Origin: Octopus sinensis
Taxonomy: Eukaryota
Direction: 5' to 3'
Length of the DNA: 64,000 bases
NCBI RefSeq assembly: GCF_006345805.1
Contig: NC_043000.1
Span: 159,340,001-159,404,000 of the forward strand
In this document: in pieces, positions 1,242-64,000 of the stretch
Layout: each line of letters starts with the position of its first letter
How positions within the stretch are numbered: position 1 is the first letter of the stretch
Program-made: the position numbers and the translations under genes
The notes under the pieces: generated by a model
What the model saw: the letters and a program-made list of their open reading frames with translations, nothing else
Told to the model about the DNA's origin: nothing
The model's database searches: none

Positions 1242-1576
1242 AAGGTCTGAAATTTTGTGAAATGGGGATAGTCGATTACATCCACCCCGGTGCTCAACTA
1301 GTACTTATTTTATCCATCCCGAAAGTATAAAAAGCAAAGCCGACTTCGGCGAAGACAGACGAAATACCTATTTTCTTACTACCCACAAGGGGCTAATCAC
1401 AGAGAGGACAAACAAGGACATACAAACGGATTAAGTAATTGGTACTTATTTAATCGACCCCGAAAGGATGAAAGGCAAAGTCGACCTCGGCGGAATTTGA
1501 ACTCAGAACGTAGCGGAAGACGAAATACCGCTAAGCATTTCGCCCGGTGTGCTAACGTTTCTGCCAGCTCGCCGCC
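1242..1576 (-). mobile_element. SINE family M dimer (younger unit joined to an older unit with a different tail)
   Basis: On the minus strand the head is GGCGGCGAGCTGGCAGAAACGTTAGCAC with B box GAGTTCAAATTCC. The core CCTTTCATCCTTTCGGGGTCGATTAAATAAGTACC resembles a Meta-type domain (from memory). The junction GAAATACCTATTTT is at 1361-1374. Confidence 0.85.
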
Positions 1577-4500
1577 CTTAACTCACTTTTAAATTGATAA
1601 CATATATACACGTATAGGTGAGAGCTCATGCGCAGGCATTGCCCATGGTTAAAATGTTCGCTTCTAGATCAACTTGCTTCGGTTTCAGTCCGACTAATTG
1701 ACAGCTCATCGTGTGTGTTTGTGTGCATGCGTGTGAGTGTATATATGTATTCGGGTATGTGAGTGTACTTATATGTGTGTGTTTAATCAAAGGATACTGT
1801 AAACTACAAGCTATCAAAAGAATTCACTGCAGACTAGGGGGGAAATTGATAAAGAACTTTTGTTTTCTTTTTATATAAAACCGAATGCTACAAATAGATA
1901 TTGTTTATCTCTTTATGGGAGGTCGTCAAACATTAAAACAACATTGTTAATTATGCCATTAATGAGCAAATGAAGATGGAGCGTGAAAGAGAGAGATGAG
2001 AGAGGTGAGACAGTTACCTAGCAATCAGAAAAACAATAACAACCAAAACATGACAGTAGAAAGCGACACTTATTTGTAAAGTAAGAAAAGTAATTTCTAG
2101 AGTGAAAAAGGAATAATAAACCTAACCTATATAAATATAACATTCAACTTCTGGAATGTCTTTTTCTTCTCTCACAAAAAAAGAGAAGAAAATAGATTCG
2201 TGAAGATAATTTTTAAGATACACAAGTGCTCCTATCCAATTAACTTTCAATTCTCTTTTATCTTTGTTCATGTCTAATAATCTAAAATATTTAAATTGTT
2301 TTTTTATTCCTTCTAAATTATAACGTATTTTTAATATAATTTTAAATATTTTATTATTGTACATCCTTTATTTTAAAATCGATATTATTTTTTTACAAAG
2401 AGCAAACGAACCATGTTATTATTTAAAAGAAATGTAGAACAGAGTTTCATTATTACTTTGCTGCAGAAAATAAGTGCCATGGCAAAATTTGAACTTACAG
2501 CCTAATTAGCGAAAATTATACGTAATTGAATAAGAATAAATGAAAAAACACACCACCTACAAAAGGTGATTTATCATTATTCTTGCAATTGCTTTTTCCT
2601 ACACTACAAGGCAACACTGATAGTAATAACTGTGGAAGTTATTTTAATGCCTGATGATCTCTCATAAGGAATGAAACTATACATATTCGTGGAATTCAAT
2701 TATTTTAAAATGCTTTACACACACACACACGTATGGTCACTTTACATGCTTATATGAAATTATATATATTTTGCATATTTATATGTAAAGATAAAACATA
2801 AATATATACCCCACAAAAGAGAATTATTTAACTTTTTGGTGTAATAAATATCAATTTATGGATAATCAACCTTTTCTTTTTATTGTGGGTAGACATATCT
2901 TCAACGTTCATAATTTGTTTTCTGCCTGTTTGTGTAAAATAAATGAGCTCTAAATGAAGATTCGAATAGAGTTCGTTGATTCCATTTTCTTAGAGTTTAT
3001 CCCCGGTACTGGAGCACTTTTCAATGCATCCATACAGATATATTCATACATAATAGTATATATGCATAAAGGTATGCGAACATAGACATGTACATACACG
3101 AGTGTATATATAAATGTGTTTGGGCGTTTGCATACATGGCGACAATGTATGTTGTTGGCAATTAGTTTTGCTGCCATTCGAAAAGAGTACACCCTAAGCA
3201 GCAACCCAACCTCTGAAACCCTACTACTGATAAACTCTAATACCCAGTATGATATATAGTCTTTAACGCATTTTCTTCATAGCCGTCTCCCATATCTATA
3301 TTTCTTAACCAACTTTCCTCTTCTCACTGTCAACACTTAGGATTTTCAGCTTCAGATTACTCTTCATACACCATTTCAGCTTCGTGATATTTCCCATTCC
3401 CCCATCAGCTGTCATTGCTTGTTAGTAAGTAATTCTATACGCGGGTGGGTTTACACCCAGAAAGGAATGAAAGAGAAAAATCCACCCTTAATTTGGGGGT
3501 AATATTTCTGTATTGAGATTTATGCTTTTACTCCCTGAATTTGTTTTCTTAGTATTTGGAGGAACTTTTTATTTTCAAGGTTTTATTTCATTCTTTGGGC
3601 AACACTTTATATGTTACCGTTCTGACTGCTTCACCTGATGTTTGTTAAGTACAAAGGGGATGAAAGAAGGGGGATGAAAGTAGAAGGATGAAAGTAGATA
3701 TACTAGAAATAAATACTAGAGTATACTCGGGAGTGAGAGAGAGGGAGGACGGGGGTGAGCGAAAGAAGGCTCATGCGTATATATGTGCGTTGGTACAACA
3801 TTGATACATCGATTTTCTAATCATGCACAGATGTTCTCTCTAAACTGCTAGACAAGAGATTAACATTCTGTCCTTTCATGAACGTGGTTTCACGCCCATG
3901 TACAATGCACACAGTTCCCAATATCCTAGCTCTCAAAACAACTTCTGTGTACGAAATGATACTTATACAGTTCTTGTGAACATTGGCTAGACTTAAAAGA
4001 AAGAAGAAAAACAAACACAAAAAGATAAAGAAAGACCTGTCTATTGCTAGTGGTAAATAATGTCCCAATGTAAGCGAGATACTTATTGTTTGTTTTATTT
4101 TATAACCTTAACAAGCTTGTTCGTTTAAGACTAGCTCCGCAGCATTTTGGATTTATTACGCAAATTTCACACAATTGCAAATATTTAACCAGAAGATAGA
4201 GATAGTGTACAAACAGAAAAAAAAAACGCAGCTAACTTCCCTTGCCCGTATATAACATTGATTGTTAACAAGTAGAGAGTATGTATATAACATTGATTAT
4301 TGTAAGCAGAGAGTACGGAGGCACAAATGTTTTCTCAAATGATACATTATGCCATATTGTGTTTTTCTGTAGCCCTTATCTAACATAAATCACCAGAGAA
4401 CAAAAGATTTCAGCTGTGCTATACACAGAAATAGACGTAATGTTAAAGGCAAGCCTCTTTTCTTTTTCTTTCCTTCACTAAATTTTCACTTTATCCCGAG

Positions 4501-10359: not shown

Positions 10360-10609
10360 AAATTATGTACAAATATTTATACACACACAAATACATACAT
10401 GCATGTACGTACATATATCTGTGTGTGTATATATATTAATAGGTGTGTGGTGTGTGTCTATGTATATATATATATATATATTGCTGTATCTATAATTACA
10501 TACGTGTAAAACTATCTATCTATATACGTATATACATATAAATATATATGTACATATATATACATAGACACACACACACATATATATATACAAATATATA
10601 CATATATAA

Positions 10610-10642
<33 letters not shown>

Positions 10643-10890
10643 CATACACATATATACATAGGCATATATACATACATACACACATATACATAGGCATATA
10701 TACATACATACACACATATACATAGGCATATATACATACATACACACATATACATAGGCATATATACATACACACATATACATAGGCATATATACATACA
10801 TACACACATATACATAGGCATATATACATACATATATATACACACACACATATTATATATATATATATATCACAAATTTATATACACATA
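10360..10890. repeat. Compound (TA)/(CA) microsatellite containing a 30-bp minisatellite
   Basis: The unit CACATATACATAGGCATATATACATACATA is repeated about 6 times at ~10648-10830. Confidence 0.9.
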
Positions 10891-10892
10891 TT

Positions 10893-10995
10893 TATCTATA
10901 TACATGTTTAATGGTATCTAACTCTAACTCCTCCCACACCGTCCAACCGATTTTAATGATTTTTTGCACATACGTAGATCATATGCCTTGCAATT
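10893..10995 (+). mobile_element. Helitron-like 5' fragment
   Basis: It starts TCTATATAC and contains AACTCCTCCCACACCGTCCAACCGATTTTAATGATTTTTTGCAC. A similar segment occurs in reverse in the other Helitron-like copies. Confidence 0.45.
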
Positions 10996-10999
10996 CAAA

Positions 11000-11096
11000 T
11001 ATATACATATACACATATATACATATACATATATATATACATACATACATACATTTATATACATACATATATACATATACACATACACACATGTAT

Positions 11097-11132
<36 letters not shown>

Positions 11133-11168
11133 CACACACATATATATATATATATATACGTATGTGTG

Positions 11169-11201
<33 letters not shown>

Positions 11202-11430
11202 GTATGTATATATATACATACATATATTTATATATATATATATATGTATATGTATATATATGTATATCTATATATCTATATGTATATATATATATATGTA
11301 TATCTATATATCTATATGCATATATATATATGTATATATATATATCTATATGCATATATATATATGTATATATATATATATATGTATATATATGTATATA
11401 TATGTGTGTATATATACATACACACACATT
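11000..11430. repeat. Compound (TA)/(CA)/(TG) microsatellite
   Basis: Read directly from the sequence. Confidence 0.95.
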
Positions 11431-11431
11431 T

Positions 11432-11981
11432 GACTCAGACTGCCCTCTTCGAGCTGTTAAACATGGTGGAGGATCTGTGAAGCTGTGAGGGTGAGGGTCT
11501 ATATCTTGGAAATCCGCTGGTCCAATGGTTTCCCTTCATGGTAGAATTAATAGTCAAGACTATTTAAGCATTTTATGTGATCAAATTCATCCTATGTTGC
11601 GGAACTGTTTCCAGAGGGAAACGCAATATTTCGGGACGATAACTCACACAGCTAAAGTTGTTACTGAATTGCACGAGGAACATTCTAGTGAAGTTGAACC
11701 TCTTATCTGGCCACCACCATCACCAGATTTCAATATTATTGAACATTTATGGCGCATTTTAGAAAAAGGAGTCGATAACCTCCACCATCATCACTACAAG
11801 AACTGGGGACTGTTTTAGCTGAAGAATGGACAAAAATTCCTTTGGAAACAATTCTAACTTTGTACAAATCCATATCTCGTAGCATTCAAGCTGCAATTAC
11901 TGCCAAAGGCGGGCCTACCCCATATTAAAATAAGTTTGTTTGAAATTTTAAGGTGTTTCCTTATTGTGTCCAACTCATGTA
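11432..11981 (+). mobile_element. Tc1-like transposon, 3' half (decayed DD34E region plus right TIR)
   Basis: It translates to [40 protein letters not shown] and AKGGPTPY*. It ends ...TGTCCAACTCATG|TA. Confidence 0.88.
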
Positions 11982-12171
11982 TATGTGTATAAGCTGGAAG
12001 TGGAAATAGCACAGAAGTAAGTATAGTATAAAACTTTTCAATTTAAGAGGGAATTGATAAATTATATAAAGAAAATATTACCGGTTTCGATGTATCTCAT
12101 CCTATGAAATATCAGTAAAAATTCATACACAATTCCAACACAATGTAAAGCAGTTCATCTTCCGTCTGGGG

Positions 12172-12181
12172 TTAAATATAT

Positions 12182-12231
<50 letters not shown>

Positions 12232-12312
12232 TATATATATATACACATATATACATAGACATACAAATGCACACATACGTATATATGCATATATATATAC
12301 ATATATATATAC

Positions 12313-12395
<83 letters not shown>

Positions 12396-12412
12396 TATAT
12401 ATATATATATAC

Positions 12413-12459
<47 letters not shown>

Positions 12460-12558
12460 TGCACACACACACACACATATATATATATAACATATATACA
12501 TAGACATACAAATGCACACATACGTATATATGCATATATATATACATATATATTATAC

Positions 12559-12592
<34 letters not shown>

Positions 12593-12596
12593 CAGA
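12172..12596. repeat. Compound TA microsatellite with an internal block duplication
   Basis: The block CATAGACATACAAATGCACACATACGTATATATGCAT occurs twice, about 247 bp apart. Confidence 0.9.
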
Positions 12597-13145
12597 CAAT
12601 AAACATACGCACGCAATATTCAAATGTTATTATTTATAGCTTTATGTGTATATATGAGCGCTTCGAGATATGTTATTTCACCGAAGAATTATTTCACAAT
12701 GTCTGAAATGTTTATAAAATTTTTATGAGGTCAACAATATATTTGTGTCTATACATGCTTACATGTACATACGTAAACTTAAATTCATGCATATTTTTAC
12801 ATGCATAGAAATGCCTGCAACACACAAACACACACAGATCTCAGGGTATTTTAAAACCCTGGAACCTGTTATTCCCAAGAAATCAGCAGTATATAAAATT
12901 ACATGTTGCAGAAATTTTGAAGAAAAACTAAAAACTTTATGTTTATTATTTCTTTTTTATATTTCAACTCTCTTATTTAGTGATTTAAAATTTTGGTAAT
13001 AAAGAACCAAAAATCATGAACAAAATATATTAGATTTAGAAAAACATGTATTGCTATAAAGAAAACTATTAATCTGAAAAACGTCTACAAAAATACTTTC
13101 CTGAATACTAAAAAAATATATTTCAATCAGATCATTTTTCTACTT

Positions 13146-15924: not shown

Positions 15925-16065
15925 AAAGATACAAAGCAGTGTGTAATGACAGTAAAAGAGCCTTATTGGAATGACTAGCCTTGATCTTCTCTCAATAAGT
16001 TGTCTTTTTGTGTTGAAAACATGAGTTGGTGATAAGATTTCTATATTGACAATGGTTCTCTTATT

Positions 16066-16452
16066 TGTTTGTCATTTGACTGTGGCCATGCTGGAGCATC
16101 GCCTTTAAAGGATTTTTAGTCGAACAAATCGACCCTAGGACTTTCTTTTTAAACCTAGTACTTATTCTATCGGTCTCTTTTGCAGAACCACTAAGTTAAA
16201 GGAACGTAAACACACCAACGCCGGTTGTCAACGGTGATGGGGGACAAACACTAGGATACACACACACACACACATACACACACACACACACATATATACG
16301 GCAGGCTTCTTTTAGTTTTCATCCACCAAATCTACTCACAAGACTTTGGTCGGCCCGAGGCTTTCGTAGGCGACACTTGCCCAAACTGAACCTGGGGCCC
16401 AAGCTGAACCTGGGGCCATGCAGTTGGGAAGCAAGTTTCTTAACACACAGCC
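16066..16452 (-). mobile_element. SINE family C (CORE-like)
   Basis: It contains CTTGGGCAAGTGTC (CORE-like), an internal (CA)n, and the tail TGCTCCAGCATGGCCACAGTCAAATGAC. Confidence 0.85.
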
Positions 16453-16643
16453 ACATATATATCTATATAATGTGTGCGTGTGTGCTGGCGTATATATATT
16501 TACATATGGATCTTTACTGAAATGTATGTTCTTCTAAATAACTGTGAAAGGTCACATAATTTTACCAAACCTATCATGTATCAAGCGCAAATACATGAAA
16601 TTGTGTGTATAATTAATAATACACACATGCGTATCTCTCTCTC

Positions 16644-18674: not shown

Positions 18675-18679
<5 letters not shown>

Positions 18680-18899
18680 CTTTACTACCCACAAGGGGGT
18701 AAACATAGAGAGGACAAACAAGGACAGGCACACGGATTAAGTCGATTATATCGACCCCAGTGCGTAACTGGTACTTATGACCCCGAAAGGATGAAGGGCA
18801 AAGTCGACCTCGGCGGAAATTGAAGTCAGAACGTAGCGGCAGACGAAATACTGCTAAGCATCTCGCCCAGCGTGCTAACGTTTCTGCCAGATCGCCGCC
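18675..18899 (-). mobile_element. SINE family M monomer with tail A
   Basis: Full head, core and tail ending AGTAAAGAAATA, embedded between (TA)n tracts. Confidence 0.92.
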
Positions 18900-18901
18900 T
18901 T

Positions 18902-22286: not shown

Positions 22287-22793
22287 TTATGTGTGTGTAT
22301 ATACGTGTGTGTGTGTGTGTATGCATAAATACATGCACATACACACTCACAAACGTACACAAAAAGCAAAGCAGAAGGGTAGGAATGGAAGAAAATGGGT
22401 GTGTGAAAGCTATCAGAATCAAAAGTAACTCATTACTAAGTAAATTAGCTGATATCAAATAGCCAGTTATTTAATTAGAATCTGTAATTAACAATGAACT
22501 TGGTTCAGATCAGTTACTATGATGAGAAACCGTTTAAGAAGAGGAATCTCGCTGAAATAACCTCGCAGAATAGAAGTTCCAGTGTTGCGTGTGTATGAGG
22601 AGAATACATGTGATGGGAATCGACCTAAAATTGCATTCTCGGAGCAAACCTTCAGATTGGCTGAATACTGCGGATCGATAAGCGATCATAAACAACAAGT
22701 GAGAGGCGGTGGCAGCAGCAGCTGCTAAGAACGCGCATCACGAAGCGTGAACTGCTAATAGTACAATGCGCTACTCCGAAATTGCTTAACACT

Positions 22794-23460
22794 TATTTCT
22801 TTACTGCCCACAAGGGGCAGCACACAGAGGGGACAAACAAGGAGAGACAAACGTAATAAGTCGATTATACCGACCCCAGTGCGTAACTGGTACTTATTTA
22901 ATCGACCCTGAAAAGATGAAAGGCAAAGTCAACCTCGGAGGAATTTGAACTCAGAACGTAGCGGCAGAAGAAATACCCATTTCTTTACTACCTACAAGGG
23001 GCTAAACTCAGAGAGGACAAACAAGGACAGACAAACGGATGAAGTCGATTATATCGACCCCAGTGCGTAACTGGTATTTATGTAATCGACCCTGAAAGGA
23101 TGAAAGGCAAAAAGTCGATTATATCGATCCCAATGCATAACTGGTATTTATGTAATCGATCCCGAAATGATGAAAGGCAAAGTTGACCTCAGCGGAGTTT
23201 GAACTCAGAACGTAGCGGCAGACGAAATACCCATTTCTTTACTACCCACAAGGGGCTAAACACAGAGAGGACAAACAAGGACAGACAAAGGGATCAAGTC
23301 GATTATATCGACCGCAGTGCGTAACTGGTACTTATTTAATCGACCCCGAAAGGATGAAAGGCAAAGTCGACCTCGGAGGAATTTGAACTCAGAACGTAGC
23401 GGCAGACGAAATACCACAAAGCATTTCGCCCAGCGTGCCAACGTTTCTGCCAGCTCGCCG
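22794..23460 (-). mobile_element. SINE family M trimer
   Basis: Three units, of which only the 5'-most has the A-box head. Junctions are at 22970-22983 and 23224-23237. The middle unit has a ~65-bp internal duplication. A single TSD, AATTGCTTAACACT, lies at 22780-22793 and 23467-23480. Confidence 0.92.
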
Positions 23461-25551
23461 ACCTTGAATTGCTTAACACTGACTATGGAATGATGAAAGA
23501 GCAATATGGCGTTTTTCGTTGAGTTCTGCGTTTCTGTAACCCAAGTTCCGGCAGATAGAGTTTGGAATGCGAACGGGTGACAAAAGATGATGCGCACGAG
23601 ACTCACTTTAAATGTAGTCGTTGCTCCGAATATGCCGGGGATCGATTCCCGTCACACACACAGTACACTGTATGTCCTTTGCTTGTTAAAATAGATGTTG
23701 CCAATCGACATCTACCTCATCAGGCAATACTCGTAGTGAGGATAACAATTATGGTGTCCGCCTTGAAGACAATTATTAAAAAAAAAAGAAAAGGCAAATC
23801 TTAAAACCATTGGGTATTAAAAATGATTTTAGATTATTTTGGCATAACCCAACAAGTTCGTATTCAGAGTAACCTAAACAAGTTACCTACGCACAGCTAA
23901 TGAACACAAGTTATACTATTGTTCCCAGTATTTACTGCACCCTTATTCCTCATCTTTAGTATTTCTTTGTCCCTAATAACTACTGCTAGTTAGCCGTTGA
24001 CCCTACCTTGTATCCATCCGTCTTTTTTGGCAGGCTTTGTTTTTGTTCTGTTAGTTCTGTAGCAATCTTCTACACCAGGCTGTCTTGGAAAAGCCGATTT
24101 ATTCACCGACATCTCAACACTGTAACAAGTTGTACTAACTTACATTATACCCGTAACACTCATTAATGTCGTGACGTAATGTGAATATAAGTAGACATGT
24201 GTATATATATAATCTTACAGGAAACAATAAATTCATAAACATACATATGCATCCATGTAGGCAAACGTGTATATAGATTTACATAAATAACAAATATCGC
24301 ACCACATCCAAAGCCTTAGTATTAGAGACACACCAATCTAATTGCCAAAATGTAATTACAGCAACAAAACCTTCCGCTGAGATAATTGTAAAAGCCTAAT
24401 AAATTTGCTCGTTTACTGAGCAATAATAAATATTTGCCAACAGCATCGAAAATTATATACAGTACTTAGAACATAACATAATACTCGCAGCACTATTAGG
24501 TTTTCAGTTCCGGTTAAACAGAATGAATTTCCCTCGCTGTTTCTAGACATCTGGTTATTGAAGGAAAGCAGAACAGGCAACAGTCAACAATACGCTGAAA
24601 CCTTGCTGATACACGAGGCCTATGTCACAGCGGATTAAAGATATGCAGCTTATGCTTAGCAAAGAAATACCCAGATGCAGCTACTCATGAGGTTAAGCAA
24701 AAAAAGATGAAGTGCTATTCGAGTGCAAGCATAAAAGATGATTACACCTGCAGACCAGAAAACCTGGAAACCAGCACCAGTATGGACATGTTGGATGCTA
24801 CGCTATCAGGGCAATAATTTTCCCCTGTGTGTAAACACTACATTGCATAATGCACAAGCCCTACACCACATCTCACAGAATACTAATTTCTCTCTCACCA
24901 ACAATTTAGAAGTGCATTGATACTTTATAAAGAGAGAACACGAAAATGATGGCTATTAACTGGACTACACAACGGGGAAGAAAATTACGTGCAACCACTC
25001 GACTTGCAAGCAATAATAACTCAATCTTTCTCCCCTTATATCACATCCTGTTGTATTTAAAATGATATATTGCACAATGTAATCCAAGATATACTGCGCT
25101 TAGTAAACAAAGCAGCTGGATCGCTCGATTATTGCTCGATTATTGCTTACAAGACGCGGGAAGCAACAACGGCAGACAAAGATAAAAACAATTCTAAAAC
25201 AACCTTGAAACATGCCTAAACAGGTTGGACAGCTAATGCAATAATATATTCGTCAGCTGCTACATACTAGCCTAACAACAGACTTCTAAGTTGAAATGTA
25301 TAATGAGGCCTCAGTCTAAACTGAAGTGTTTAATATTTTTGATGTAATGGGTATCTAGGTCATTCCCAAAGCTTGATTGGCTACTTCGTAGCTAAAACGT
25401 TGAAGTAGTGATACAAAAGAAAAAGAAAAATGCAACCTATTTATTTAGTGTAAAGAAATGACTTTAGGAAGCTTTCCCAAACTGATGAAATTGATGCAGT
25501 TGATGTTTGTTTAATTTCAATAAATGAATGCATGTAGGGAAAACGTGAAAG

Positions 25552-30994: not shown

Positions 30995-33559
30995 TATATA
31001 TATGAAAAGGTTGAGCTCTGTTTCATTTACTTTGAAGAGCTCCAAAGGGCTATTTCTAACAAAGACGCTTCATATTTTGTTGGTAGCCTACTGGCGTAAG
31101 ATTCTTGCGAATATGAAATTATTATATATATATGGTGTGTGATGAGAATGTATGGAAAGGTATCCCACAGAAACTCAACAAACTGTTGAAGATGGATACG
31201 AGATGTTAAAATTTGAAAAAAGTATTTTAATATATACATACGATCGTTTCGAACAGAAATATTAACATGTAAATAACATGGTAGAATAATTAGAAATTAT
31301 TTTAATTAAATTAATCACATATCGCTGTTCTCCTCAGTGCGAAAAAGAAACAAAAAATATTTATAGGGCCCAAAATTTCTCAAAACCTTTACTTCAACGA
31401 AACATAAAAAAAAGCCAAAAGGAAAACTTCATCGATAGCAACAACCCAGTCTTCATTGTACAAAAACTACAAGCTCACGTACATAGTTTCTTCTCGCTAC
31501 AGTTTCTACCGTTACTACTGTAGCATCTCTGCCTCTGAAATAATTAGCTGCATATTCACACAAGCCCAACTGACGAAATATCTTTATCTCACCTTTACTA
31601 TGTGTCATCTCCCAAATCTCAGACCTACACCTTCTCTGGTCTGAACATTTCATCTATTCGTTTCTCCCCAAAACTGCCTGCAATTGCACCTCCTCCACAA
31701 ACGTCTGTGTGCAGACACAGACCTACCTTTAAAAGTAAACATCACCCAAATAAATTTTGTTCTTTTCTTAGCTAGCAAAGCAAAGAAAAAAAACTAAAGC
31801 AAAAGCATTTAGCTTTAAATATGTAGCATGGTCTACTAGAAGCTCCGTTGCAATTAGCAGCAACGAAACTGTAAAATTAAATAGAGATTCGTTAGCTTGT
31901 GATGCTTAAGTTCAACAGCTAATAAATAGCTCGAAGTGAGATGATCTCCAGTTGTATGATTTGCCGAAGACTTTCAGCATGTACATAATATGTAATTCTT
32001 CTGTGGTTTCTGTAGTATCCAATAGCTAAATGGAATAAATATAATATACCATGCTCACAGACACAATGAAAGTTCAGCAACTAGAGATACACTGAATAAC
32101 CAAGAGTTAGTAACCCGACACCGCATCCGACAAGCTATTTCACTACTCATACAACATATTACACCATAATTCATTTAGAACCCAACATTTAGGACATGTT
32201 TATTCTCCGTCATGTTATGATGATCACTTGTTCAAATAACAAAAGACTTCGAGTAATAAATCTTTCACAAAACGAAAATGTAATTGGTTTTATTGTATAG
32301 CACTGTAGTTATTTGTTTGACTTATGGCTGCATTCGGTGTCGTTCTGCACAAAGAACACTTCATGATTATGTGAATGTTTGTTTGTTTGTGTGTTTGTGT
32401 GTGTGAACTTAAAACAAAAGCTTACACACACCCTCACCTTTTTCGTCTTCCATAATGACAGCATTTAACATTCCATAAATATTTAAATGTTGGTTTGCTT
32501 ATAATAAATATAAGTCTATATAGAAACACACATACATATGCTAAGACACCATGCACGCACGTATGAACACGCACAAACACGTATTATATACATACAAGTG
32601 TAAATATACATGTGCGTGTATACAAATACATTTCTGTAGGCATACATGTGTGGGTGAGAGAGTGTGCCTGTGAGTGTGTATACGTGTGAGCATGAATGTG
32701 TGCATGTGTGTGTAACATAGGATGATTATTAGAATGTGGGTTGGGTTTCCGTCACTTATACTATAAACACTTGAGGTTATAACATTGAAACATAATAACT
32801 CAGGTCAAGTCAACCTCATAAAAAACTAGAGTTCAGTGTCGTAAATTTAAAATTTTTAACTGCCACATGCTGTGAAACTAACCGCTAACATAATTTATTG
32901 TTTAAAATTCGTTGTCAGACAACACACAGTCATTTTTATTAGTGTGTGACGTGCATGTGAGCTTGTGCGCTTGCGTATAATGTACTTATGTCTCTGTGTA
33001 GCAGCTTCATTTTGTCATCTGCTCAGAGCTGATTTTGTACGTAGACAGTGAAATTATATTAGTAAACTGTTTCGAGATTTCCAATGAAATATTTCATAAG
33101 GTAAATAAAAATGGAAAACAATACAGAACATATGAGTTAATTCTAATAATTCTATTTACGAAGGTAGTTCCATATGGTATTTCTAGTCATAAGGATATAT
33201 ATCTTGATATATTTCTGGATTATATGAAAGTATGAAAATTATGGATTGGTTTATAAGATACACAGCCAGTCCAAAGTATTTAAAACTTATACTGAATCAA
33301 TAATCTATTTGCTCTGGAAAAGATCACATAATATTAGCCGTATACTAAATAACATATATGCTCTACTACATGATGTAAGAGACTGAGAAATCATGCATGA
33401 TTCTGAATGAACCGAATCAAAATAAATAACTAACATTTTCAAGCGGTTGATAAACCGGCAGGTTCTCTCTAGAAGTTATAGCTCCTGAAAATTGTATCAA
33501 TTTATGGTAAGAATTACATTTATAAGGACATACATCTGTTATCTTTCACGTTTCTTGTT

Positions 33560-33885
33560 AAACTCATTGGACTACGGCCATGCGAGTGCACCAACTTGAA
33601 GTGTTTTGATCAAACAAATCGAGACCAGAGCCTAATTTTTTAAAGCCGGGTACTTCCTCTATTGGTATCTTTGGCCGAATCACTAGGTTGTAGAGGATGG
33701 AAACAAATCAACACCGGTTGTCAAGCGGTTGTGGGAGAAAAACACACACATATATACGATGGACTTCTTCCAGTTTCCATCTACCAAATTCATTCACAAA
33801 GCTTTGGTCGGCCCCGGGTTATAGTATAAGACATTTGCCCAAGGTTCCACACAGTAGGACAAAACCCGGAATCATGTTGGAGTCA
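33560..33885 (-). mobile_element. SINE family C, diverged
   Basis: Collinear match to 40060-40420. Confidence 0.75.
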
Positions 33886-40059: not shown

Positions 40060-40420
40060 ATACTCTCCCTTTTACTTGTTTCAGTCATTTGATTGTGGCC
40101 ATGCTGGAGCACCGCCTTTAGTCGAGCAAATCGACCCCAGGACTAATTTTTTGAAAGTTTAATACTTATTCTATCGGTATCTTTTGCCGAACGGCTAAGT
40201 TACGGGGATATAAACACACCAGCATCGGTTGTCAAGCGATGTTGGGAGGGACAAACACACACACATATATATACGACTGGCTTCTTTCAGTATCCGTCTA
40301 CCAAATCCACTCACAAGGCTATAGTTGGCCCGAGGCTATAGTAGAAGACACTTGCCCAAGGTGTCACGCAGTGGGACTGAACCCGGAATCATGTGGTTCG
40401 TAAGCAAGCTACTTACCACA
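40060..40420 (-). mobile_element. SINE family C (CORE-like), near full length
   Basis: tRNA-like head (GGTAAGTAGCTTGC..GGTTCAGTCCC), CORE-like GACACCTTGGGCAAGTGTC, internal TA/CA tract, and tail GGCGGTGCTCCAGCATGGCCACAATCAAATGACTGAAACAAGTAAAAG. Confidence 0.9.
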
Positions 40421-40422
40421 CG

Positions 40423-40454
<32 letters not shown>

Positions 40455-41368
40455 AATATACATATAAATACATATATATACATATATATATACATATATA
40501 CATACACACACATATATATATATACACACATATACATACATATATATATATATACACATATCCATACATACATACATATACACATATACATACATACATA
40601 TATACATACATACATATACACATATACATACATATATTTATATACACATATACATACATACATATATTTATATACACACATACATACATACATATATATA
40701 TACACATATACATACATATATATATATACGCATACACATACATATATATATATACACGTACATATATATATACACACATACACATACATATATATATATA
40801 CACATACATATATATATACACATATACATACATACATATATATACACATATACATACATATATATATACACATATACATATATATATATACACATATACA
40901 TATATATATATACACATATACATACATATACATACACATATATACACATATACATACATATACATATATATACATACACATATATACACATATACATACA
41001 TATACATATATATATACATACATATACATACACATATACATACATATATATATACACATATACATACATATATATATATACACATATACATACATATATA
41101 TATATACACATATACATACATATACATATATATATATACATACATATATATATATACATACATATATAAATATACAAATATACATACATGCATATACATA
41201 CATATATATACATACATATACATATACATACATTACATATACATACATACATATGTATATATACATACATATATATATATATACATATATACATACATAC
41301 ATATATACATACATACATATGTATATATACATACATATGTATATATATATATACACACACACACACAC
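40420..41368. repeat. ~950-bp compound (TA)/(CA) microsatellite
   Basis: Read directly. It generates the spurious 240-360 aa YI/VC ORFs in the track. Confidence 0.95.
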
Positions 41369-42155
41369 TGGCAGCTGAGCCCGGTTTCACCTGGTCGGTT
41401 TGGATGATGTGGCTGTAAAACCTGTTCCCAGTAAGAATTCGAATTATTTGCGCACGCTTACGTTAAAAAATGTTGGAATTACTCTTTTCTCTCAAAACGC
41501 TAAAAATAACTAACAAAAAAAAGCAAGATTCAACCAAATGAAAAAACCCAAAATACTAAGCAAACAACGATGAACTATCCCACTTCCATTGCTTGCGCAC
41601 ACGCACACACACACAAACATACACATACACACACATTCACATACTCCCCTTTTACATACACACACATATTCCCACAATGTTGAAACGCTGTTTGATTTAT
41701 TTTTTTCAGCGTACACTACCAAGTATGACACCACCCCTTCCTTCTTTATTCATTTATTACCCCTTCCTTTCTCATTCATAAACACAAGAGTATCATTATA
41801 ATGGATTTTCATGGGAGTTATGAAAAAATACAAAGCCCAGCATCACCACTGAATCATTTTACACAGGAGTAATGTTTCGTGCAGTTCCACTCAGCCGTTT
41901 GACCACGAATCGCAAGACAAGAAAGAATTGCTCATTTTAAATTTATATGTATAGATATACATACATGAATATATATGTATACATATATCTACACACACAC
42001 ACACACACATATATATATATCTTTACATATACATACATATATATACATATATATATGTGTGTATATATACATGTGTATGTGTATATATGTGTATGAATAT
42101 ATGTGTGCATGTATATATGTATATATATGTATATATCTATGTATATATGTTTCTG

Positions 42156-48481: not shown

Positions 48482-48513
<32 letters not shown>

Positions 48514-48514
48514 T

Positions 48515-49088
48515 TTCAAATTTTGGCACAAGCCCAGGAAGTTCGATGGAGCGGGTAAGTCGATTACATCGACCCCAGCGCTCAAGTGGTACTCTTTCTA
48601 TCGACCGCGAAAGGATGAATAATGAAGTCAATCTCGACGGAATTTCAACTTAGAACGTAAAGAGACGAATGAAATACCTATTTCTTTACTACCCACAAGG
48701 GGCTACACACAGAGAAGACAAACAAGGACAGACAAAGGGAATAAGTCGATTACATCGACCATAGTGCGTAACCGGTACGTAATATATCGACCCCGAAAGG
48801 ATGAAAGGCAAAGTCGACCATGGCAGAATTAGAACTCAGGACGTAAAAACAGGTGAAATACCTATTTCTTTATTACCCACAAGGGGCTAAACAGAGGGGA
48901 CAAACAAGGACAGACATAGGTATTAAGTCAATTACATCGACCCCAGTGCGTAACTGGTACTTAATTTATCGACCCCGAAAGGATGAAAGGCAAAGTCGAC
49001 CTCAGCGGAATTTGAACTCAGAACGTAACGGCAGACGAAATACGGCTACGCATTTCGCCCGGCTTTCTAACGTTTCTGCCAGCTCGCA
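48515..49088 (-). mobile_element. SINE family M trimer (two tail-A units plus an older unit with a TTA tail)
   Basis: The junction GAAATACCTATTTC occurs at 48671-48684 and 48855-48868. Confidence 0.9.
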
Positions 49089-58413: not shown

Positions 58414-59589
58414 TACACTGGCGACAATAAATTTAAGACCGATGACAAAAGTTCTATTTCTTATAAAATATTTTGTTATTAACACCATACAAATTATTGT
58501 CATCGTTTACACCTTATGCAGAATTTATTTCTCTTTCGAATGATGCAAATAATAACTTTATACAACTTGAAATATTCGAATGCTAAATTAATATAAACGT
58601 TTCAAATTTACCGGCAAAATTAGTTTAAGACCGTATCATTATAATTTTATTTAAAGCTTAAGCTTGTAGCAAAAATGAGCAACAAGAACGAAATACATAT
58701 TTGTAATTTGTGCTGTAGCCTTTATTCTTAATAAATGGATGGAATTCTTCGGTTGGGTGACGTTTGACTTATGCTTTACCATCTGATCCTAATATACAGA
58801 TGCGTGACTCGTCACTCCAAAGGACCCTGCACCAATCTTCGGCAGTCCATTGAGCATGGCTTTTTGCGAAATTAAGGCGTTTGAGTCGATTTCTTTCGGA
58901 TATTACTGGCTTTTTCCTAGCGAGTCGTCCATGTAGTCCAAATTCTCTCAAACGGTTGCGGGCGGTTTGTGGTGTAAAAATAACACCATTCTCGTTGGAC
59001 AATTGCCAACGGCTGTCAGCATTCGGTTGCCTTCCGAAAGTCAGTGGATTCGACGGTCCAACTTGCGCCGTCGATTTTTTTGGGGCGCCAGTCCTTTGTC
59101 GATCTTTATATTGACCAGTCTCCGAGTATAACTTCCACTCTTGCATACAAGCCGTTTTACTGCGCTTTAGTTGCTTGCCGATGTTCGAAAAATAAACTTT
59201 TGCTGGTGGAGTAATACGATTTTTGCTCATGTGACTGGACTGAGGCTACATTTTTTTCCCATTATTAATCAATTGTATAATAATGTTAAATTATAACACT
59301 ATATAGTACGGTTAGGCTAGTTGTGTGAACACCCATTTTGGCAAAAACATTTGCATACACATTACATAGTCTTAAACTAATTTTGCCAGAAAAATTGAAA
59401 CGTTTATATTAATTTAGCATTAGAATTCTTCAAGTTGTATAAAAATAGTTATTCTCTGTATCATTCGAAAGAGAAATAAATTCTGCAAAAAGTGTAAAAG
59501 ATTAAAATAATTTGTATGGTATTAGTAACAAAATATTTTCTAAGAAACATAACTTTTATCATCGGTCTTAAATTTATTTGCGACGTGAC
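58414..59589 (-). mobile_element. Tc1-like transposon with IR/DR ends and an internal deletion
   Basis: Inverted repeats of about 220 bp (58416-58636 and 59366-59587), each with TTTAAGAC motifs at both ends. ORF 59230-58769 encodes an HTH region and WTAEDWCRVLWSDESRICILGSDG. The rest of the DDE domain is deleted after EEFHP. Confidence 0.9.
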
Positions 59590-60917: not shown

Positions 60918-62191
60918 TAGGCTTCCCGGAAAGTCCTGAGCGTTTTTAAGCAAAATCTTTTAACGCTTCTTTGAACACATCTGAAACGTGACACAGTAAA
61001 AACTTCGGCGTTGCATGAAGTGGTAGTGCATCTCTTATTTGTTCCGGACTAAATATAAATTTATCTTTCATTCTGATTACCCTTTATTGACATTTGGAAT
61101 GAATAACCAAAAACTTTACATTCGCATTGTAATGCTTTTCTTTCTTAAAACAAAAAAAGGAGAAAATGGTGCAAAAACTCGCAAAAACATTTGTGAAGTT
61201 AATGGTGATAATGCTGTAGGTGAATCAACTGTTCGAAGGAGGTTTGCAAAATTTAAAGCTGGAAAGTTTAGCCTGGAAGATAACAGTCGCAATGGAAGGC
61301 CTTCAAAATTCGATGAAGATGTTTTGAAGGCAAAAATCGAAGAAAACTCAAATATCATGACTAGAAAACTTGCAGAGGAGCTGCAAGTTACTAAAAGTAC
61401 GGCTCATGAAACCCTAGTGAAGCTAGGATACATTTCTCGCTATAATGTATGGGTCCCTCATAGATTCTCAGAAAAGAATTGCTTGGACCAGTATTATGTT
61501 GCTGATATGCTTTTGAAACGGAATGAAAACATGCATTTTTTTAAACAACTTGTGGAGATGAAAAATGGATTGTGTACGAAAACAATGTGCGAAAAAGATC
61601 CTGGAATCTGCGTAAGGATCCCTCCAAACAACAAGCATAGACGAATATCCATGTCAAAAAAGCTATGTTTAATGTTTGGTGGGATCATAAAAGCATTATT
61701 TATTACGAGATTCTCCTTCAAAACCAGGCCATTAATTCTGTCGTCAGCTAGCTAATTTAAACCCCAAAATCAAAGAATTGAGTCAGGAGATTGCCAACAG
61801 GAAAGGAGTAGTGTTCCAAAAAGACAATGCACGACTACATGTATCTTTCGCTACCCGAACAAAATTACATGAAGTTGGCTGGGATCTCTCACCCTATTCA
61901 CAATATTCTCCTGATATTGCACCATCCGACTACCACTTGGTTTTGTCTAGAGAACTCATAGCAAGGAAAAACATTTAACAATTTAGATGGGGTCAAAATG
62001 CATCTAGATAACTTGTTTCTTCAAGAACGGGTTAAATTTTATGATGATGGAATATTTAAATTGCCTGATAGATGGGCCAAGTTCATTAATGATAATGGAA
62101 ATTATTTCATTGAATGAAATGTATTGAAAGGTCAATTATTCATATCCCTTTTTGCATTTAAAAAACCGCTCAAAACTTTCCGGACAACCTA
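60918..62191 (+). mobile_element. Full-length, inactivated mariner (cecropia/Hsmar1-like)
   Basis: TIRs TAGGCTTCCCGGAAAGTCCTGAGCG and CCGCTCAAAACTTTCCGGACAACCTA. The transposase spans 61099-62117 with WVPH, GDEKW (after a frameshift), DNAR and YSPDIAPSDYHL motifs, plus frameshifts. Confidence 0.93.
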
Positions 62192-63400: not shown

Positions 63401-63802
63401 AATATTACTGCCATCAAAAACACTGCTAATAACATCGGATATGAAGCTAAAGAACAACAAACACCACACAAAAAAAAAAAAAACTCGAAGAAAGCAATAA
63501 TATATGGTAGTCACTGCTACAAATAGAAACAATGGTTTCCGCTAAAGAGCCAACAAGGAAGTCGCTACGCGATGACCCATACAATTAGAAATAGTAGCCA
63601 ATATCTTCGTCAAATAGCGAAAGCTTCCTGAAATGATATTCTACTGCAGTAGATTCTAAACTTTTTGACTTGCTACTTGATTGGCTATCAAATATAAAAT
63701 TATATATCGTACTTCGCATGGAGAATTTCAAGAAAACAGTTTTAAAGTTAAAGCTTTAGAAGATAAATAACTGTTACTTGCCTTGCTTTATTAAACATAC
63801 AA

Positions 63803-63963
63803 GGCGCAGGAGTGGCTGTGTGGTAAGTAGCTTGCTAACCAACCACATGGTTCCTGGTTCAGTCCCACTGCGTGGCATCTTGGGCAAGTGCCTTCTGCTA
63901 TAGCCCCGGCCGACCAATGCCTTGTGAGTGGATTTGGTAGACGGAAACTGAAAGAAGCCTGTC

Positions 63964-63964
<1 letters not shown>
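63803..63964 (+). mobile_element. SINE family C, 5' portion, followed by (TA)n to the window end
   Basis: GGCGCAGGAGTGGCTGTGTGGTAAGTAGCTTGC head and CORE-like segment. Confidence 0.9.

Positions 63965-64000
<36 letters not shown>

What the first reader, a model, noticed from the sequence alone, without database searches (positions are those of the whole stretch)
22780..23480. SINE trimer with a fixed hairpin junction inside a single TSD
Seen: three family-M units lie head-to-tail. Only the 5'-most unit has the first ~45 nt (A box). The other two start at the same internal position (minus strand GGTATTTC), directly after the previous tail (...AAAGAAAT). One 14-bp TSD (AATTGCTTAACACT) encloses all three. 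The tail end GAAATA is complementary to the internal TATTTC, so the consensus junction is a hairpin (one mismatch at this locus) and the SINE RNA could form a panhandle. Inference: the reverse transcriptase may jump from position ~45 to a new 3' end, making a multimeric cDNA in one event, like a rolling circle. Repeated site-specific insertion into the same position is the alternative.
Basis: partly seen in the sequence, partly recalled or inferred. Interest (0 to 1): 0.75.

Follow-up and report, generated by a model that had tools for sequence, protein, structure and literature searches.

The report
Octopus SINE arrays with fixed junction
A short retrotransposon (SINE) of Octopus repeatedly forms head-to-tail arrays whose later units always begin at the same internal base, probably because new copies insert at a preferred site in the head of resident copies, although a one-step reverse-transcriptase jump is not excluded.

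Summary
Window 22794-23466 (minus strand) holds three units of a 232-nt Octopus SINE between perfect 14-bp direct repeats. Only the 5' unit has nt 1-48. The other two start at G49 (GGTATTTC), right after the previous tail.

The junction is fixed in all 6 cases found in 216 kb of Octopus DNA: two more arrays in this window and an O. sinensis dimer inside one 17-bp TSD. G49 is the first base of the 3' arm of a conserved head hairpin, and the tail mimics the 5' arm.

Rolling-circle or same-RNA copying is contradicted, because units within arrays belong to different subfamilies or families. Older-looking units lie 3'. The upstream partner always carries the M tail. No solitary unit starts at 49. 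One non-array M copy also sits directly 5' of GGTATTT (p about 7e-4).

My best reading (confidence 0.4) is repeated insertion at this preferred site in resident heads, with the 5' end joined through homology. That keeps the original TSD. An intermolecular RT jump (0.27) and multimeric source genes (0.2) remain open. Only a genome-wide census and orthologous loci can settle it.

The parts
22780..22793 (.). 3'-side copy of the 14-bp target-site duplication (AATTGCTTAACACT on the + strand)
   Evidence: Family D4, 100% identical to 23467-23480. It abuts the tail of U3.
22794..22977 (-). Unit U3, the 3'-most unit (consensus 49-232, subfamily 'd'). Its tail ...GTAAAGAAATA abuts the TSD.
   Evidence: blastn/nhmmer 49-232, 92.4% to consensus. 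About 14 differences in 184 nt. It shares the TTATT and GTGTG variants with the second unit of array B.
22978..23231 (-). Unit U2, the middle unit (consensus 49-232 plus a 70-bp internal duplication). Base 22978 is the G between its tail and U3.
23042..23181 (-). Two tandem copies of a 70-bp segment (consensus 99-168) inside U2. The copies differ at 6 of 70 sites. The junction makes a T5 run.
   Evidence: TRF period 70, 2.0 copies, 91% matches. The ends lie beside the two TCGACTT repeats at consensus 94 and 162.
23232..23415 (-). Body of unit U1 (consensus 49-232). Base 23232 is the G between its tail and U2.
   Evidence: Only 4 differences in 184 nt from the consensus, the least diverged unit.
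23416..23466 (-). Head of U1 (consensus 1-48 plus 3 extra 5' bases, CAA), with an A-box-like GAGCTGGCAGAA. Present only in the 5'-most unit.
23404..23431 (-). Head hairpin: 5' arm at consensus 33-44 (window 23420-23431), loop at 45-48 (23416-23419), 3' arm at 49-60 (23404-23415). Downstream units begin at the first base of the 3' arm.
   Evidence: RNAfold of the consensus. The isolated hairpin gives -18.3 kcal/mol, z = -3.0, and the O-family version -14.3, z = -3.3. Pairs are kept in 18 heads mostly through one-sided changes, and the covariation term is weak.
23467..23480 (.). 5'-side copy of the 14-bp target-site duplication
48512..49087 (-). Array B. U1 is an M unit of subfamily b (48863-49087, consensus 6-232). 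U2 is an M unit of subfamily d (48679-48862, consensus 49-232). U3 is a unit of the related O family that starts at 49 and ends ...CCAAAATTTGAAATC(ATT)n (48512-48678). Both junctions read AAAGAAATA|GGTATTTC.
1245..1579 (-). Array C. U1 is a full M unit of subfamily a (1369-1579, with an internal 22-nt deletion). U2 is an O-family unit starting at 49 (about 1245-1368). The junction reads AAGAAAATA|GGTATTTC.
18675..18901 (-). Solitary full-length M copy inserted in a (TA)n tract. It serves as a reference monomer.

Best explanation
Family M is a 232-nt SINE of Octopus. It has a head with A- and B-box-like motifs, a conserved core, a tail ending ...GTAAAGAAATA with no poly(A), and TSDs of 14-21 bp.

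I propose that its integration machinery (the unidentified partner LINE) prefers to make the first nick just 5' of RGTAT / GGTATTT. The SINE carries an excellent copy of that site at positions 49-56 (GGTATTTC), at the base of the head-hairpin loop. New M copies therefore often start reverse transcription at a nick between positions 48 and 49 of a resident copy of M, or of the related O family, which has the same head.

The second-strand nick normally falls 14-21 bp downstream. The upstream DNA end then carries resident positions 49 to about 65. The growing cDNA is homologous to that stretch and to the whole resident head. The 5' end is therefore joined by annealing instead of non-homologous joining.

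The product is [head + new body 49-232][resident 49-232]. It is seamless, has no new TSD, and is still flanked only by the TSD of the first insertion. A further hit at the head or at a junction adds another unit.

Shown here: the fixed junction, the single outer TSD, the target motif at independent M insertions, the mixed and ordered composition of arrays, and the hairpin position.

Inferred: that the nick falls at 48|49 of resident copies, that the 5' end is resolved by homology, and that the units entered at different times.
For: (1) Fixed junction. All 6 junctions in 215,885 bp of Octopus DNA join an M tail to consensus position 49.

(2) Target preference seen outside arrays. At L007 15212 an M copy truncated at position 69 sits directly 5' of GGTATTTA, inside the antisense core of an inverted SINE. 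With 41 non-head GGTATTT sites among about 432,000 positions and 7 non-array insertions, p is about 7e-4. The solo copy in L003 has a TSD starting AGTATAT. The other flanks start AGTGTTA, TATATTA, (TA)n and (ATT)n.

(3) The upstream partner always has the M tail. The downstream unit is M in 4 cases and O in 2. The abundant Q family shows no Q-to-Q arrays among about 25 copies.

(4) Polarity. The order 5' to 3' is a,a',d in the trimer, b,d,O in array B and a,O in array C. Private changes rise from 4 to 9 to about 11 in the trimer and from about 4.5 to about 17 in array B. CpG transitions are 0 of 12 in the trimer's U1 body against 3 of 12 in each of U2 and U3 (read).

(5) Four arrays have four different compositions, which argues for recurrent assembly from the pool of resident and active copies.

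(6) No solitary unit starts at 49, whereas truncated solo copies start at 41, about 45 and 69.

(7) A single outer TSD in both testable arrays, 14 bp and 17 bp, is what this model predicts.

(8) Precedents. A LINE that carries internal copies of its own target forms 3'-to-internal joins at those sites (Zorro3, PMC3510499). Insertion into the same locus has been invoked for SINE-derived satellites (PMC10702118). Chimeric L1 formation through homology with a resident L1 is from my own knowledge (Gilbert 2002, Symer 2002).
Against: (1) The heads of arrays B and C are M-type (GAAAC, GGGCGAAAT), not the O-type GAATC expected if the resident O head had simply been kept. The model then needs heteroduplex repair or branch migration that replaces the head.

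(2) Both trimer junctions have G where the other four have A. Two independent insertions would both have to come from a rare G-ending source.

(3) Trimer units U1 and U3 share a private G-to-T change (CCTCCG) that U2 lacks.

(4) The L004 dimer shows no age gradient: about 5 against 4 private changes, and U2 has lost fewer CpGs.

(5) No unresolved product such as [1-62][1-232][49-232], and no upstream unit with a deletion after about position 62, was seen among the 6 cases.

(6) Heads are occupied far more often than other sites: 6 of 14 against 1 of 41 for other GGTATTT sites and 0 of 8 for other GGTATTTC sites. Something beyond the 8-mer must help.

(7) The target preference rests on a handful of insertions, and the partner LINE and its endonuclease are unknown.
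Confidence: 0.4

Rival explanations
1. One-event intermolecular template jump. During one target-primed reverse transcription the RT copies a SINE RNA from its tail to G49. It then continues on the 3' end of another SINE RNA, and the last template is copied to its 5' end. The stop at 49 would come from one of three causes: an RNA 5' end made by cleavage in the hairpin loop, a hard stop at the structured or modified head, or the cDNA end ...GAAATACC resembling the preferred DNA primer.
For: A single TSD surrounds whole arrays. Only the 5'-most unit has a head, and it is M-type even when the 3' unit is O-type. Junctions are clean, tail end to G49, with no microhomology, as in end-to-end jumps of non-LTR RTs (own knowledge: Bibillo and Eickbush 2002/2004; review PMC2881922 listed). 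G49 is exactly the first base after the loop of a strong head hairpin. The same G at both trimer junctions fits two templates from one source. Mixed arrays are possible if templates are different RNAs.
Against: No solitary unit starts at 49. If RNAs ended there, run-off copies should be at least as common as jumps, but the count is 0 against 6. The acceptor is always an M tail although O-like and Q copies are more numerous. Arrays B and C would require an RT that starts on an O tail and then picks M RNAs. Divergence rises 5' to 3' in two arrays, whereas one event predicts equal ages. The L007 insertion next to GGTATTT would be a coincidence (p about 7e-4).
Confidence: 0.27
2. Multimeric source genes. 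A dimer or trimer arose once or a few times, by any mechanism. It is transcribed as a whole by Pol III from the head of the first unit and retrotransposes as one element. The junction is then fixed by descent, and each array has one TSD.
For: The consensus unit and the junction contain no T4 terminator, so read-through of a fresh array is possible. Dimeric and trimeric SINE families are well known (PMC4758252; SINEBase PMC3531059). Downstream units of a source gene are free to decay, which could mimic an age gradient. The two G junctions of the trimer fit inheritance from one source. The upstream units of array B and of the L004 dimer are the same subfamily, with the GGGTAATAAAG tail variant.
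Against: Four arrays have four different compositions. Downstream units group with contemporaneous monomer subfamilies: L004 U2 with the solo copy L004 18798-18990 that still has positions 41-48, and trimer U2 with type-a monomers. They do not group with each other, so the junction formed several times or the arrays recombined heavily. Arrays ending in an O tail would need another LINE partner. The model does not explain why the junction is at 49, nor the L007 target.
Confidence: 0.2
3. Post-insertion DNA duplication. A monomer inserted, and positions 49-232 were later duplicated by unequal crossing-over or replication slippage.
For: The same locus carries a 70-bp internal tandem duplication beside short direct repeats. 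Once a dimer exists, unequal exchange can change the unit number. This could explain the two identical G junctions.
Against: The only direct homology between the tail and the head is GAAAT. Exchange there would give ...AAAGAAAT|GCTTAGCGG..., which is never seen. The same junction recurs at 4 loci with units of different subfamilies and families. The middle trimer unit is not a U1/U3 recombinant, because it lacks their shared T variant.
Confidence: 0.05
4. RNA-level joining before reverse transcription. SINE RNA is cleaved in the hairpin loop, leaving a 5'-OH at G49. An RNA ligase (RtcB-type) then joins it to the 3' end of another SINE RNA, and the multimeric RNA retrotransposes once. A self-cleaving ribozyme or retrozyme-like cycle is a variant of this.
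For: There is a precedent: U6/L1 chimeras are made by RtcB ligation before retrotransposition (PMC6789731). The junction is precise and lies at a loop boundary. There is a single TSD.
Against: No hammerhead, HDV-like or other ribozyme, and no tRNA, was detected in the trimer even at E up to 10. The upstream RNA would need a 2',3'-cyclic phosphate exactly at the tail end. The objections from age gradient, missing 49-start solo copies and M-only upstream partners apply as for the jump model.
Confidence: 0.05

Closest known systems
Octopus tRNA-derived CORE-type SINEs (OR1/OR2/OK; Ohshima & Okada 1994, cited in PMC4824008 and PMC4758252)
   Same: The host genus is the same: an M-derived ORF protein is annotated in O. 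vulgaris, and M copies occur in O. sinensis and O. bimaculoides. Both have a head with A/B-box-like motifs, a conserved central domain, a non-poly(A) tail and TSDs.
   Different: I could not compare with the published OR1/OR2 sequences because they are not in the tools. The resemblance of the core to the CORE domain is from memory. Arrays with a fixed internal junction did not turn up in the papers I searched.
Dimeric or trimeric SINE families (Alu, Twin, MEN, CYN and others) and plant SINE homo- and heterodimers
   Same: Head-to-tail units lie within one TSD, and only the first unit's promoter is needed.
   Different: Those families are fixed compositions inherited from a master and are usually whole monomers joined by a linker. 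Here the downstream units all lack the same 48 nt, the unit number varies from 2 to 3, and every array in the sample has a different subfamily or family composition.
RT template-switch or RNA-ligation chimeras (U6/L1, PMC6789731; R2 end-to-end template jumping)
   Same: Two RNAs end up in one insertion with one TSD, and the upstream partner's 3' end is intact at the junction.
   Different: In U6/L1 the downstream breakpoints are scattered; here the breakpoint is a single base. The upstream partner is always the M tail. The age polarity and the target-site evidence do not fit a one-step event well.
Target-specific non-LTR retrotransposons, and elements that carry their own target internally (R1/R2, Tx1, Zepp; Zorro3 with internal poly(A), PMC3510499)
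   Same: A sequence preference at the first nick leads to insertion into other copies of a repeat. Zorro3 forms 3'-end-to-internal-target joins at high frequency.
   Different: Nested insertions normally split the target and leave a TSD around each new copy. Here the products are seamless, which requires the 5' end to be resolved through homology with the resident copy. Chimeric L1s in cell-culture assays are an analogue (own knowledge).
SINE-derived satellites of squamate reptiles (PMC10702118)
   Same: Tandem repeats made of part of a SINE. The authors name unequal recombination and insertion into the same locus as possible starts.
   Different: Those are long, partly homogenised arrays at few loci. 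Here there are many short arrays of 2-3 units, each inside a TSD, with a base-precise junction.

Membership tests
SINE (non-autonomous, LINE-mobilised retroposon) | Short, non-coding, dispersed in many copies | tested here: met
   13 M tails and about 25 related head/core copies in 216 kb from three Octopus assemblies. The unit is 232 nt.
SINE (non-autonomous, LINE-mobilised retroposon) | Target-site duplications flanking the insertion | tested here: met
   14 bp for the trimer, 17 bp for the L004 dimer, and about 21 bp with 2 mismatches for the L003 solo copy.
SINE (non-autonomous, LINE-mobilised retroposon) | Head derived from tRNA, 7SL or 5S with an internal Pol III promoter | tested here: inconclusive
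   A-box-like GAGCTGGCAGAA and B-box-like GAGTTCAAATTCC are visible. ARAGORN and Rfam find no tRNA, even at E up to 10.
SINE (non-autonomous, LINE-mobilised retroposon) | 3' region shared with a partner LINE | not testable with these tools
   No LINE with the M tail occurs in the 216 kb held. Every M-tail match is attached to a SINE body.
CORE-SINE superfamily | Central CORE domain homologous to that of MIR, OR1 or OR2 | not tested
   The resemblance is from memory only. The 27-nt core motif recurs exactly in two unrelated eukaryote-like metagenome contigs, so it is a widely conserved domain.
Multimeric SINE family propagated from a master | The same unit composition recurs at independent loci | tested here: not met
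   Four arrays have four compositions (a,a',d / b,d,O / a,O / b,c). The sample is small.
One-event template-jump or rolling-circle product | Units of one array are copies of the same or contemporaneous templates and are equally old | tested here: inconclusive
   A single shared template is excluded by the mixed subfamilies and families. Private changes rise 5' to 3' in two arrays and are flat in one. The numbers are too small for a firm test.
One-event template-jump or rolling-circle product | A single TSD around the whole array | tested here: met
   The sequential-insertion model with homology-mediated joining also predicts this.
Site-preferring non-LTR insertion | A recurrent sequence motif at the 3' junction of independent insertions | tested here: met
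   GGTATTT follows 7 of 13 M tails, including one outside any array. RGTAT occurs at 2 of 7 non-array insertions. p is about 7e-4 for the L007 case.
Site-preferring non-LTR insertion | Each inserted copy is flanked by its own TSD and splits the target | tested here: not met
   There are no internal TSDs and no split head. The model needs homology-mediated 5' joining.
Retrozyme or ribozyme-bearing tandem retroelement | Self-cleaving ribozyme (hammerhead, HDV-like and others) in each unit | tested here: not met
   Rfam gathering scan of the window and an E up to 10 scan of 22700-23560 returned no ribozyme family.
SINE-derived satellite DNA | Long homogenised tandem arrays | tested here: not met
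   Arrays have 2-3 units that differ by 7-12%.

The most novel reading that the evidence does not exclude
The arrays are made in a single integration event. Once the nascent cDNA has copied GGUAUUUC (positions 56 to 49), its 3' end ...GAAATACC is the same sequence as the DNA primer left by the element's preferred nick. The LINE RNP, loaded with another M RNA, then re-initiates on the cDNA as if it were a target site. The SINE would carry a built-in re-priming signal that programmes multimeric cDNA synthesis. An equivalent reading is that RNAs are ligated tail-to-G49 before reverse transcription.
Probability: 0.25. Interest if true: 0.75.

Novelty: new variant of a known kind. Interest (0 to 1): 0.55.

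Why it matters
If M really carries its own preferred integration site, it is a SINE that targets its own family and builds seamless tandem arrays. That would be a concrete, testable route from dispersed retroposons to tandem repeats and satellite DNA. It would also show that a single TSD around several units need not mean one event.

If the arrays are instead made in one step, the fixed jump point at the base of a head hairpin would be a natural system for studying template switching, or RNA ligation, by a non-LTR reverse transcriptase.

Either way there are practical consequences for annotating cephalopod genomes, where SINEs are very abundant. Array units are easily miscounted as 5'-truncated insertions. 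SINE-derived ORFs are already annotated as proteins, for example P0001.

Tried and rejected
1. Collecting more copies from metagenome contigs with the core motif gave two hits, both unrelated eukaryotes with only the core motif. Scans of genome contigs and viral contigs with the M tail gave nothing.

2. A protein-database search with the translated SINE gave one protein, P0001 of O. vulgaris.

3. A search with the window's mariner ORF gave six usable Octopus loci, L004-L009. It also gave two ENA loci that are not octopus and hold no SINE copy (L010, L011).

4. I tried to reach the orthologue of the L004 dimer through exon 1 of the neighbouring transporter gene. The search returned only unrelated short proteins.

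5. Looking up a window ORF to place the window in an assembly found nothing on record.

6. The tRNA and ribozyme hypotheses for the head or unit found no Rfam or ARAGORN support.

7. A long-range pairing of positions 49-55 with the core AAGUACC showed two compensatory cases against four broken ones, so I dropped it.

8. Unequal crossover at GAAAT microhomology predicts a junction that is never observed.

9. The idea that the dimer is inherited as one unit rested on array B and the L004 dimer aligning at 90.6% over 417 bp. On inspection only the first units are the same subfamily; the second units differ.

10. The test of TSD-pair identity at positions 49-65 between adjacent units was uninformative, because there are too few variant sites.
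Full report
**What is there**

The finding lies on the minus strand. Between two perfect copies of AATTGCTTAACACT (22780-22793 and 23467-23480) there are 673 bp made of three units of one repeat.
- The 5'-most unit, U1 (23232-23466), is full length.
- U2 (22978-23231) and U3 (22794-22977) lack the first 48 nt.
- U2 and U3 begin at GGTATTTC, one base after the previous ...GTAAAGAAAT.

That intervening base is G at both junctions here. It is A, the normal last base of the tail, everywhere else.

U2 is 254 bp rather than 184 bp. It contains a 70-bp tandem duplication (23042-23111 / 23112-23181, consensus 99-168). The two copies differ at 6 of 70 sites, and their ends lie beside the unit's two TCGACTT repeats.

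**What the element is**

The window is AT-rich and full of microsatellites and transposon remnants. The translated repeat matches a 116-aa 'hypothetical predicted protein' of Octopus vulgaris that is mostly SINE. M copies occur in O. sinensis and O. bimaculoides loci.

The 232-nt consensus has these features:
- A-box-like and B-box-like motifs;
- a core whose 27-nt centre recurs exactly in unrelated eukaryote-like metagenome contigs;
- a tail without poly(A);
- TSDs of 14-21 bp.

ARAGORN and Rfam detect no tRNA or ribozyme, even at permissive thresholds. It is most likely one of the octopus CORE-type SINEs of Ohshima and Okada (cited in PMC4824008 and PMC4758252). I could not test that identity.

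**Is the junction fixed?**

I assembled 215,885 bp of Octopus DNA: the window plus L003-L009. It contains 13 M tails. Six of them are followed by position 49 of another unit:
- the two trimer junctions;
- two junctions in a second array at 48512-49087;
- one junction in a third array at about 1245-1579;
- one junction in an O. sinensis dimer, L004 5540-5954.

No junction lies at any other position. The L004 dimer sits inside one perfect 17-bp TSD. The other two window arrays lie in or beside microsatellites and have no readable TSD.

**New structural points**

RNAfold places positions 33-44 and 49-60 in a 12-bp hairpin with loop 45-48. On its own this hairpin gives -18.3 kcal/mol (z = -3.0). 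The O-family version gives -14.3 (z = -3.3). In 18 heads the pairs are mostly kept through wobble or one-sided changes, but the covariation term is weak.

Downstream units start at the first base of the 3' arm. The M tail (GGGTAG...GAAAT) imitates the 5' arm, so each junction rebuilds a weaker hairpin of -7.3 kcal/mol.

**What the arrays are made of**

Diagnostic sites define M subfamilies a, b, c and d. A related family, O, has the same head and core but a different tail...CCAAAATTTGAAATC(ATT)n. The compositions, 5' to 3', are:

| Array | Composition |
|---|---|
| Trimer | a, a', d |
| Array B | b, d, O |
| Array C | a, O |
| L004 dimer | b, c |

Units of an array are therefore not copies of one template. 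This rules out rolling-circle copying or re-copying of the same RNA.

The second unit of the L004 dimer groups with a solitary type-c copy that still has positions 41-48. The trimer's downstream units group with type-a and type-d copies. The junction thus seems to have formed repeatedly rather than once.

Private changes rise 5' to 3' in the trimer (4, 9, about 11) and in array B (about 4.5, about 17). They are flat in the L004 dimer (5, 4).

**Target-site evidence**

Seven M tails are not followed by a SINE unit. One of them (L007 15212; the copy is truncated at 69 and has no TSD) abuts GGTATTTA in the antisense core of an inverted SINE. There are 41 GGTATTT sites outside SINE position 49 in about 432,000 strand positions. 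The chance that one of seven insertions lands there is about 7e-4.

The L003 solo TSD starts AGTATAT. The others start AGTGTTA, TATATTA, (TA)n and (ATT)n. M insertions therefore prefer |RGTAT / TAT-rich sites, and positions 49-56 of the SINE are a near-perfect example.

**Weighing the mechanisms**

*(a) Sequential insertion at 48|49 of resident heads.* The usual second nick falls 14-21 bp downstream. The upstream end then carries resident positions 49 to about 65, to which the new cDNA is homologous. Annealing gives a seamless [head + new body][old 49-232] that keeps only the old TSD. This explains several things:
- the fixed junction;
- the single TSD;
- the M-only upstream partner;
- older families at the 3' end;
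- the divergence gradient;
- the varied compositions;
- the absence of solitary 49-start units;
- the L007 case.

It is strained on several points:
- the heads of arrays B and C are M-type;
- the trimer has two G junctions;
- trimer units U1 and U3 share a variant that U2 lacks;
- the L004 dimer shows no gradient;
- no unresolved product was found.

*(b) A one-event intermolecular RT jump.* This explains the M-type heads and the clean junctions. It does not explain the absence of 49-start solo copies, the M-only acceptor, the polarity or the L007 case.

*(c) Multimeric source genes.* These fit the lack of internal Pol III terminators in the consensus and the two G junctions. They do not fit four different compositions in four arrays.

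*(d) DNA-level duplication.* This predicts a junction that retains GCTTAGC, which is never seen.

*(e) RNA ligation (cf. PMC6789731).* This lacks any ribozyme or end-chemistry support.

I put these at about 0.40, 0.27, 0.20, 0.05 and 0.05.

**Comparison with the known**

Dimeric SINEs, template-switch chimeras, target-specific non-LTR elements and SINE-derived satellites (PMC10702118) each share some features. So do elements whose internal target copies become preferred join points (Zorro3, PMC3510499). None combines a base-precise internal junction, a variable unit number, mixed subfamilies and a single TSD. I found no description of such arrays in octopus in the papers searched. I rate it a new variant of a known kind.

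**Limits**

There are only four arrays and 216 kb. Subfamily consensus sequences rest on two or three copies. Age estimates rest on a few substitutions. The partner LINE is unknown. The decisive tests are a genome-wide census and orthologous-locus comparisons, as set out under decisive next steps.

Noticed in passing
window 23042-23181: A 70-bp tandem duplication sits inside the middle unit (consensus 99-168). The copies differ at 6 of 70 sites. The ends lie beside the two TCGACTT direct repeats of the unit, and the junction makes a T5 run (a Pol III terminator) in the middle of the array.
   Followed up: yes
L007 15049-15340: An M copy truncated at position 69, without a TSD, abuts GGTATTTA in the antisense core of an inverted O-like SINE that has lost its own 3' part. 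It looks like an insertion with a target deletion at the same motif as the array junction.
   Followed up: partly
L009 8252-8846 (O. bimaculoides): A chain of three 5'-truncated SINE pieces in one orientation: Q family 322-396, then M 46-232, then Q family 22-407. The first Q tail lacks its terminal repeats, and an assembly gap follows. It remains unexplained; possible readings are a deletion between neighbouring elements, a jump, or nested insertion.
   Followed up: partly
L001 78-104 and L002 1630-1656 (metagenome contigs): The 27-nt core motif TTTGCCTTTCATCCTTTCGGGGTCGAT occurs exactly in two contigs that otherwise share nothing with family M. This indicates a SINE core domain conserved across distant animals.
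   Followed up: partly
window 23256-23606 (-) and L003 10001-10351: An open frame runs through the SINE. In O. vulgaris, a 116-aa 'hypothetical predicted protein' (P0001) consists mostly of translated M SINE, which is probably an annotation artefact.
   Followed up: partly
window 58769-59230 (-) and 61039-61755 (+): Remnants of Tc1/mariner-type transposases. The second has its best matches in 'SETMAR-like' proteins of O. bimaculoides and O. sinensis at 59-72% identity.
   Followed up: partly
window 40067-40421, 16055-16454, 33551-33880, 63802-63994 and others: A second, more abundant SINE family (Q, about 408 nt, tail ...ATGACTGAAACAAGT(AAAAGAGT)n, with an internal microsatellite). About 25 copies occur in 216 kb, with no Q-to-Q arrays. 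Many copies are 5'-truncated around positions 15-23.
   Followed up: partly
L009 3980-4590: Three old O-like SINEs lie side by side in one orientation after an (ATT)n tract. Their heads are partly present (starts at about 23, 6 and 15), so this cluster is not the position-49 junction type.
   Followed up: no
window 10500-12650 and 40300-41400: Kilobase-scale (TA)n/(CA)n-type microsatellite tracts produce long spurious ORFs in several frames.
   Followed up: no
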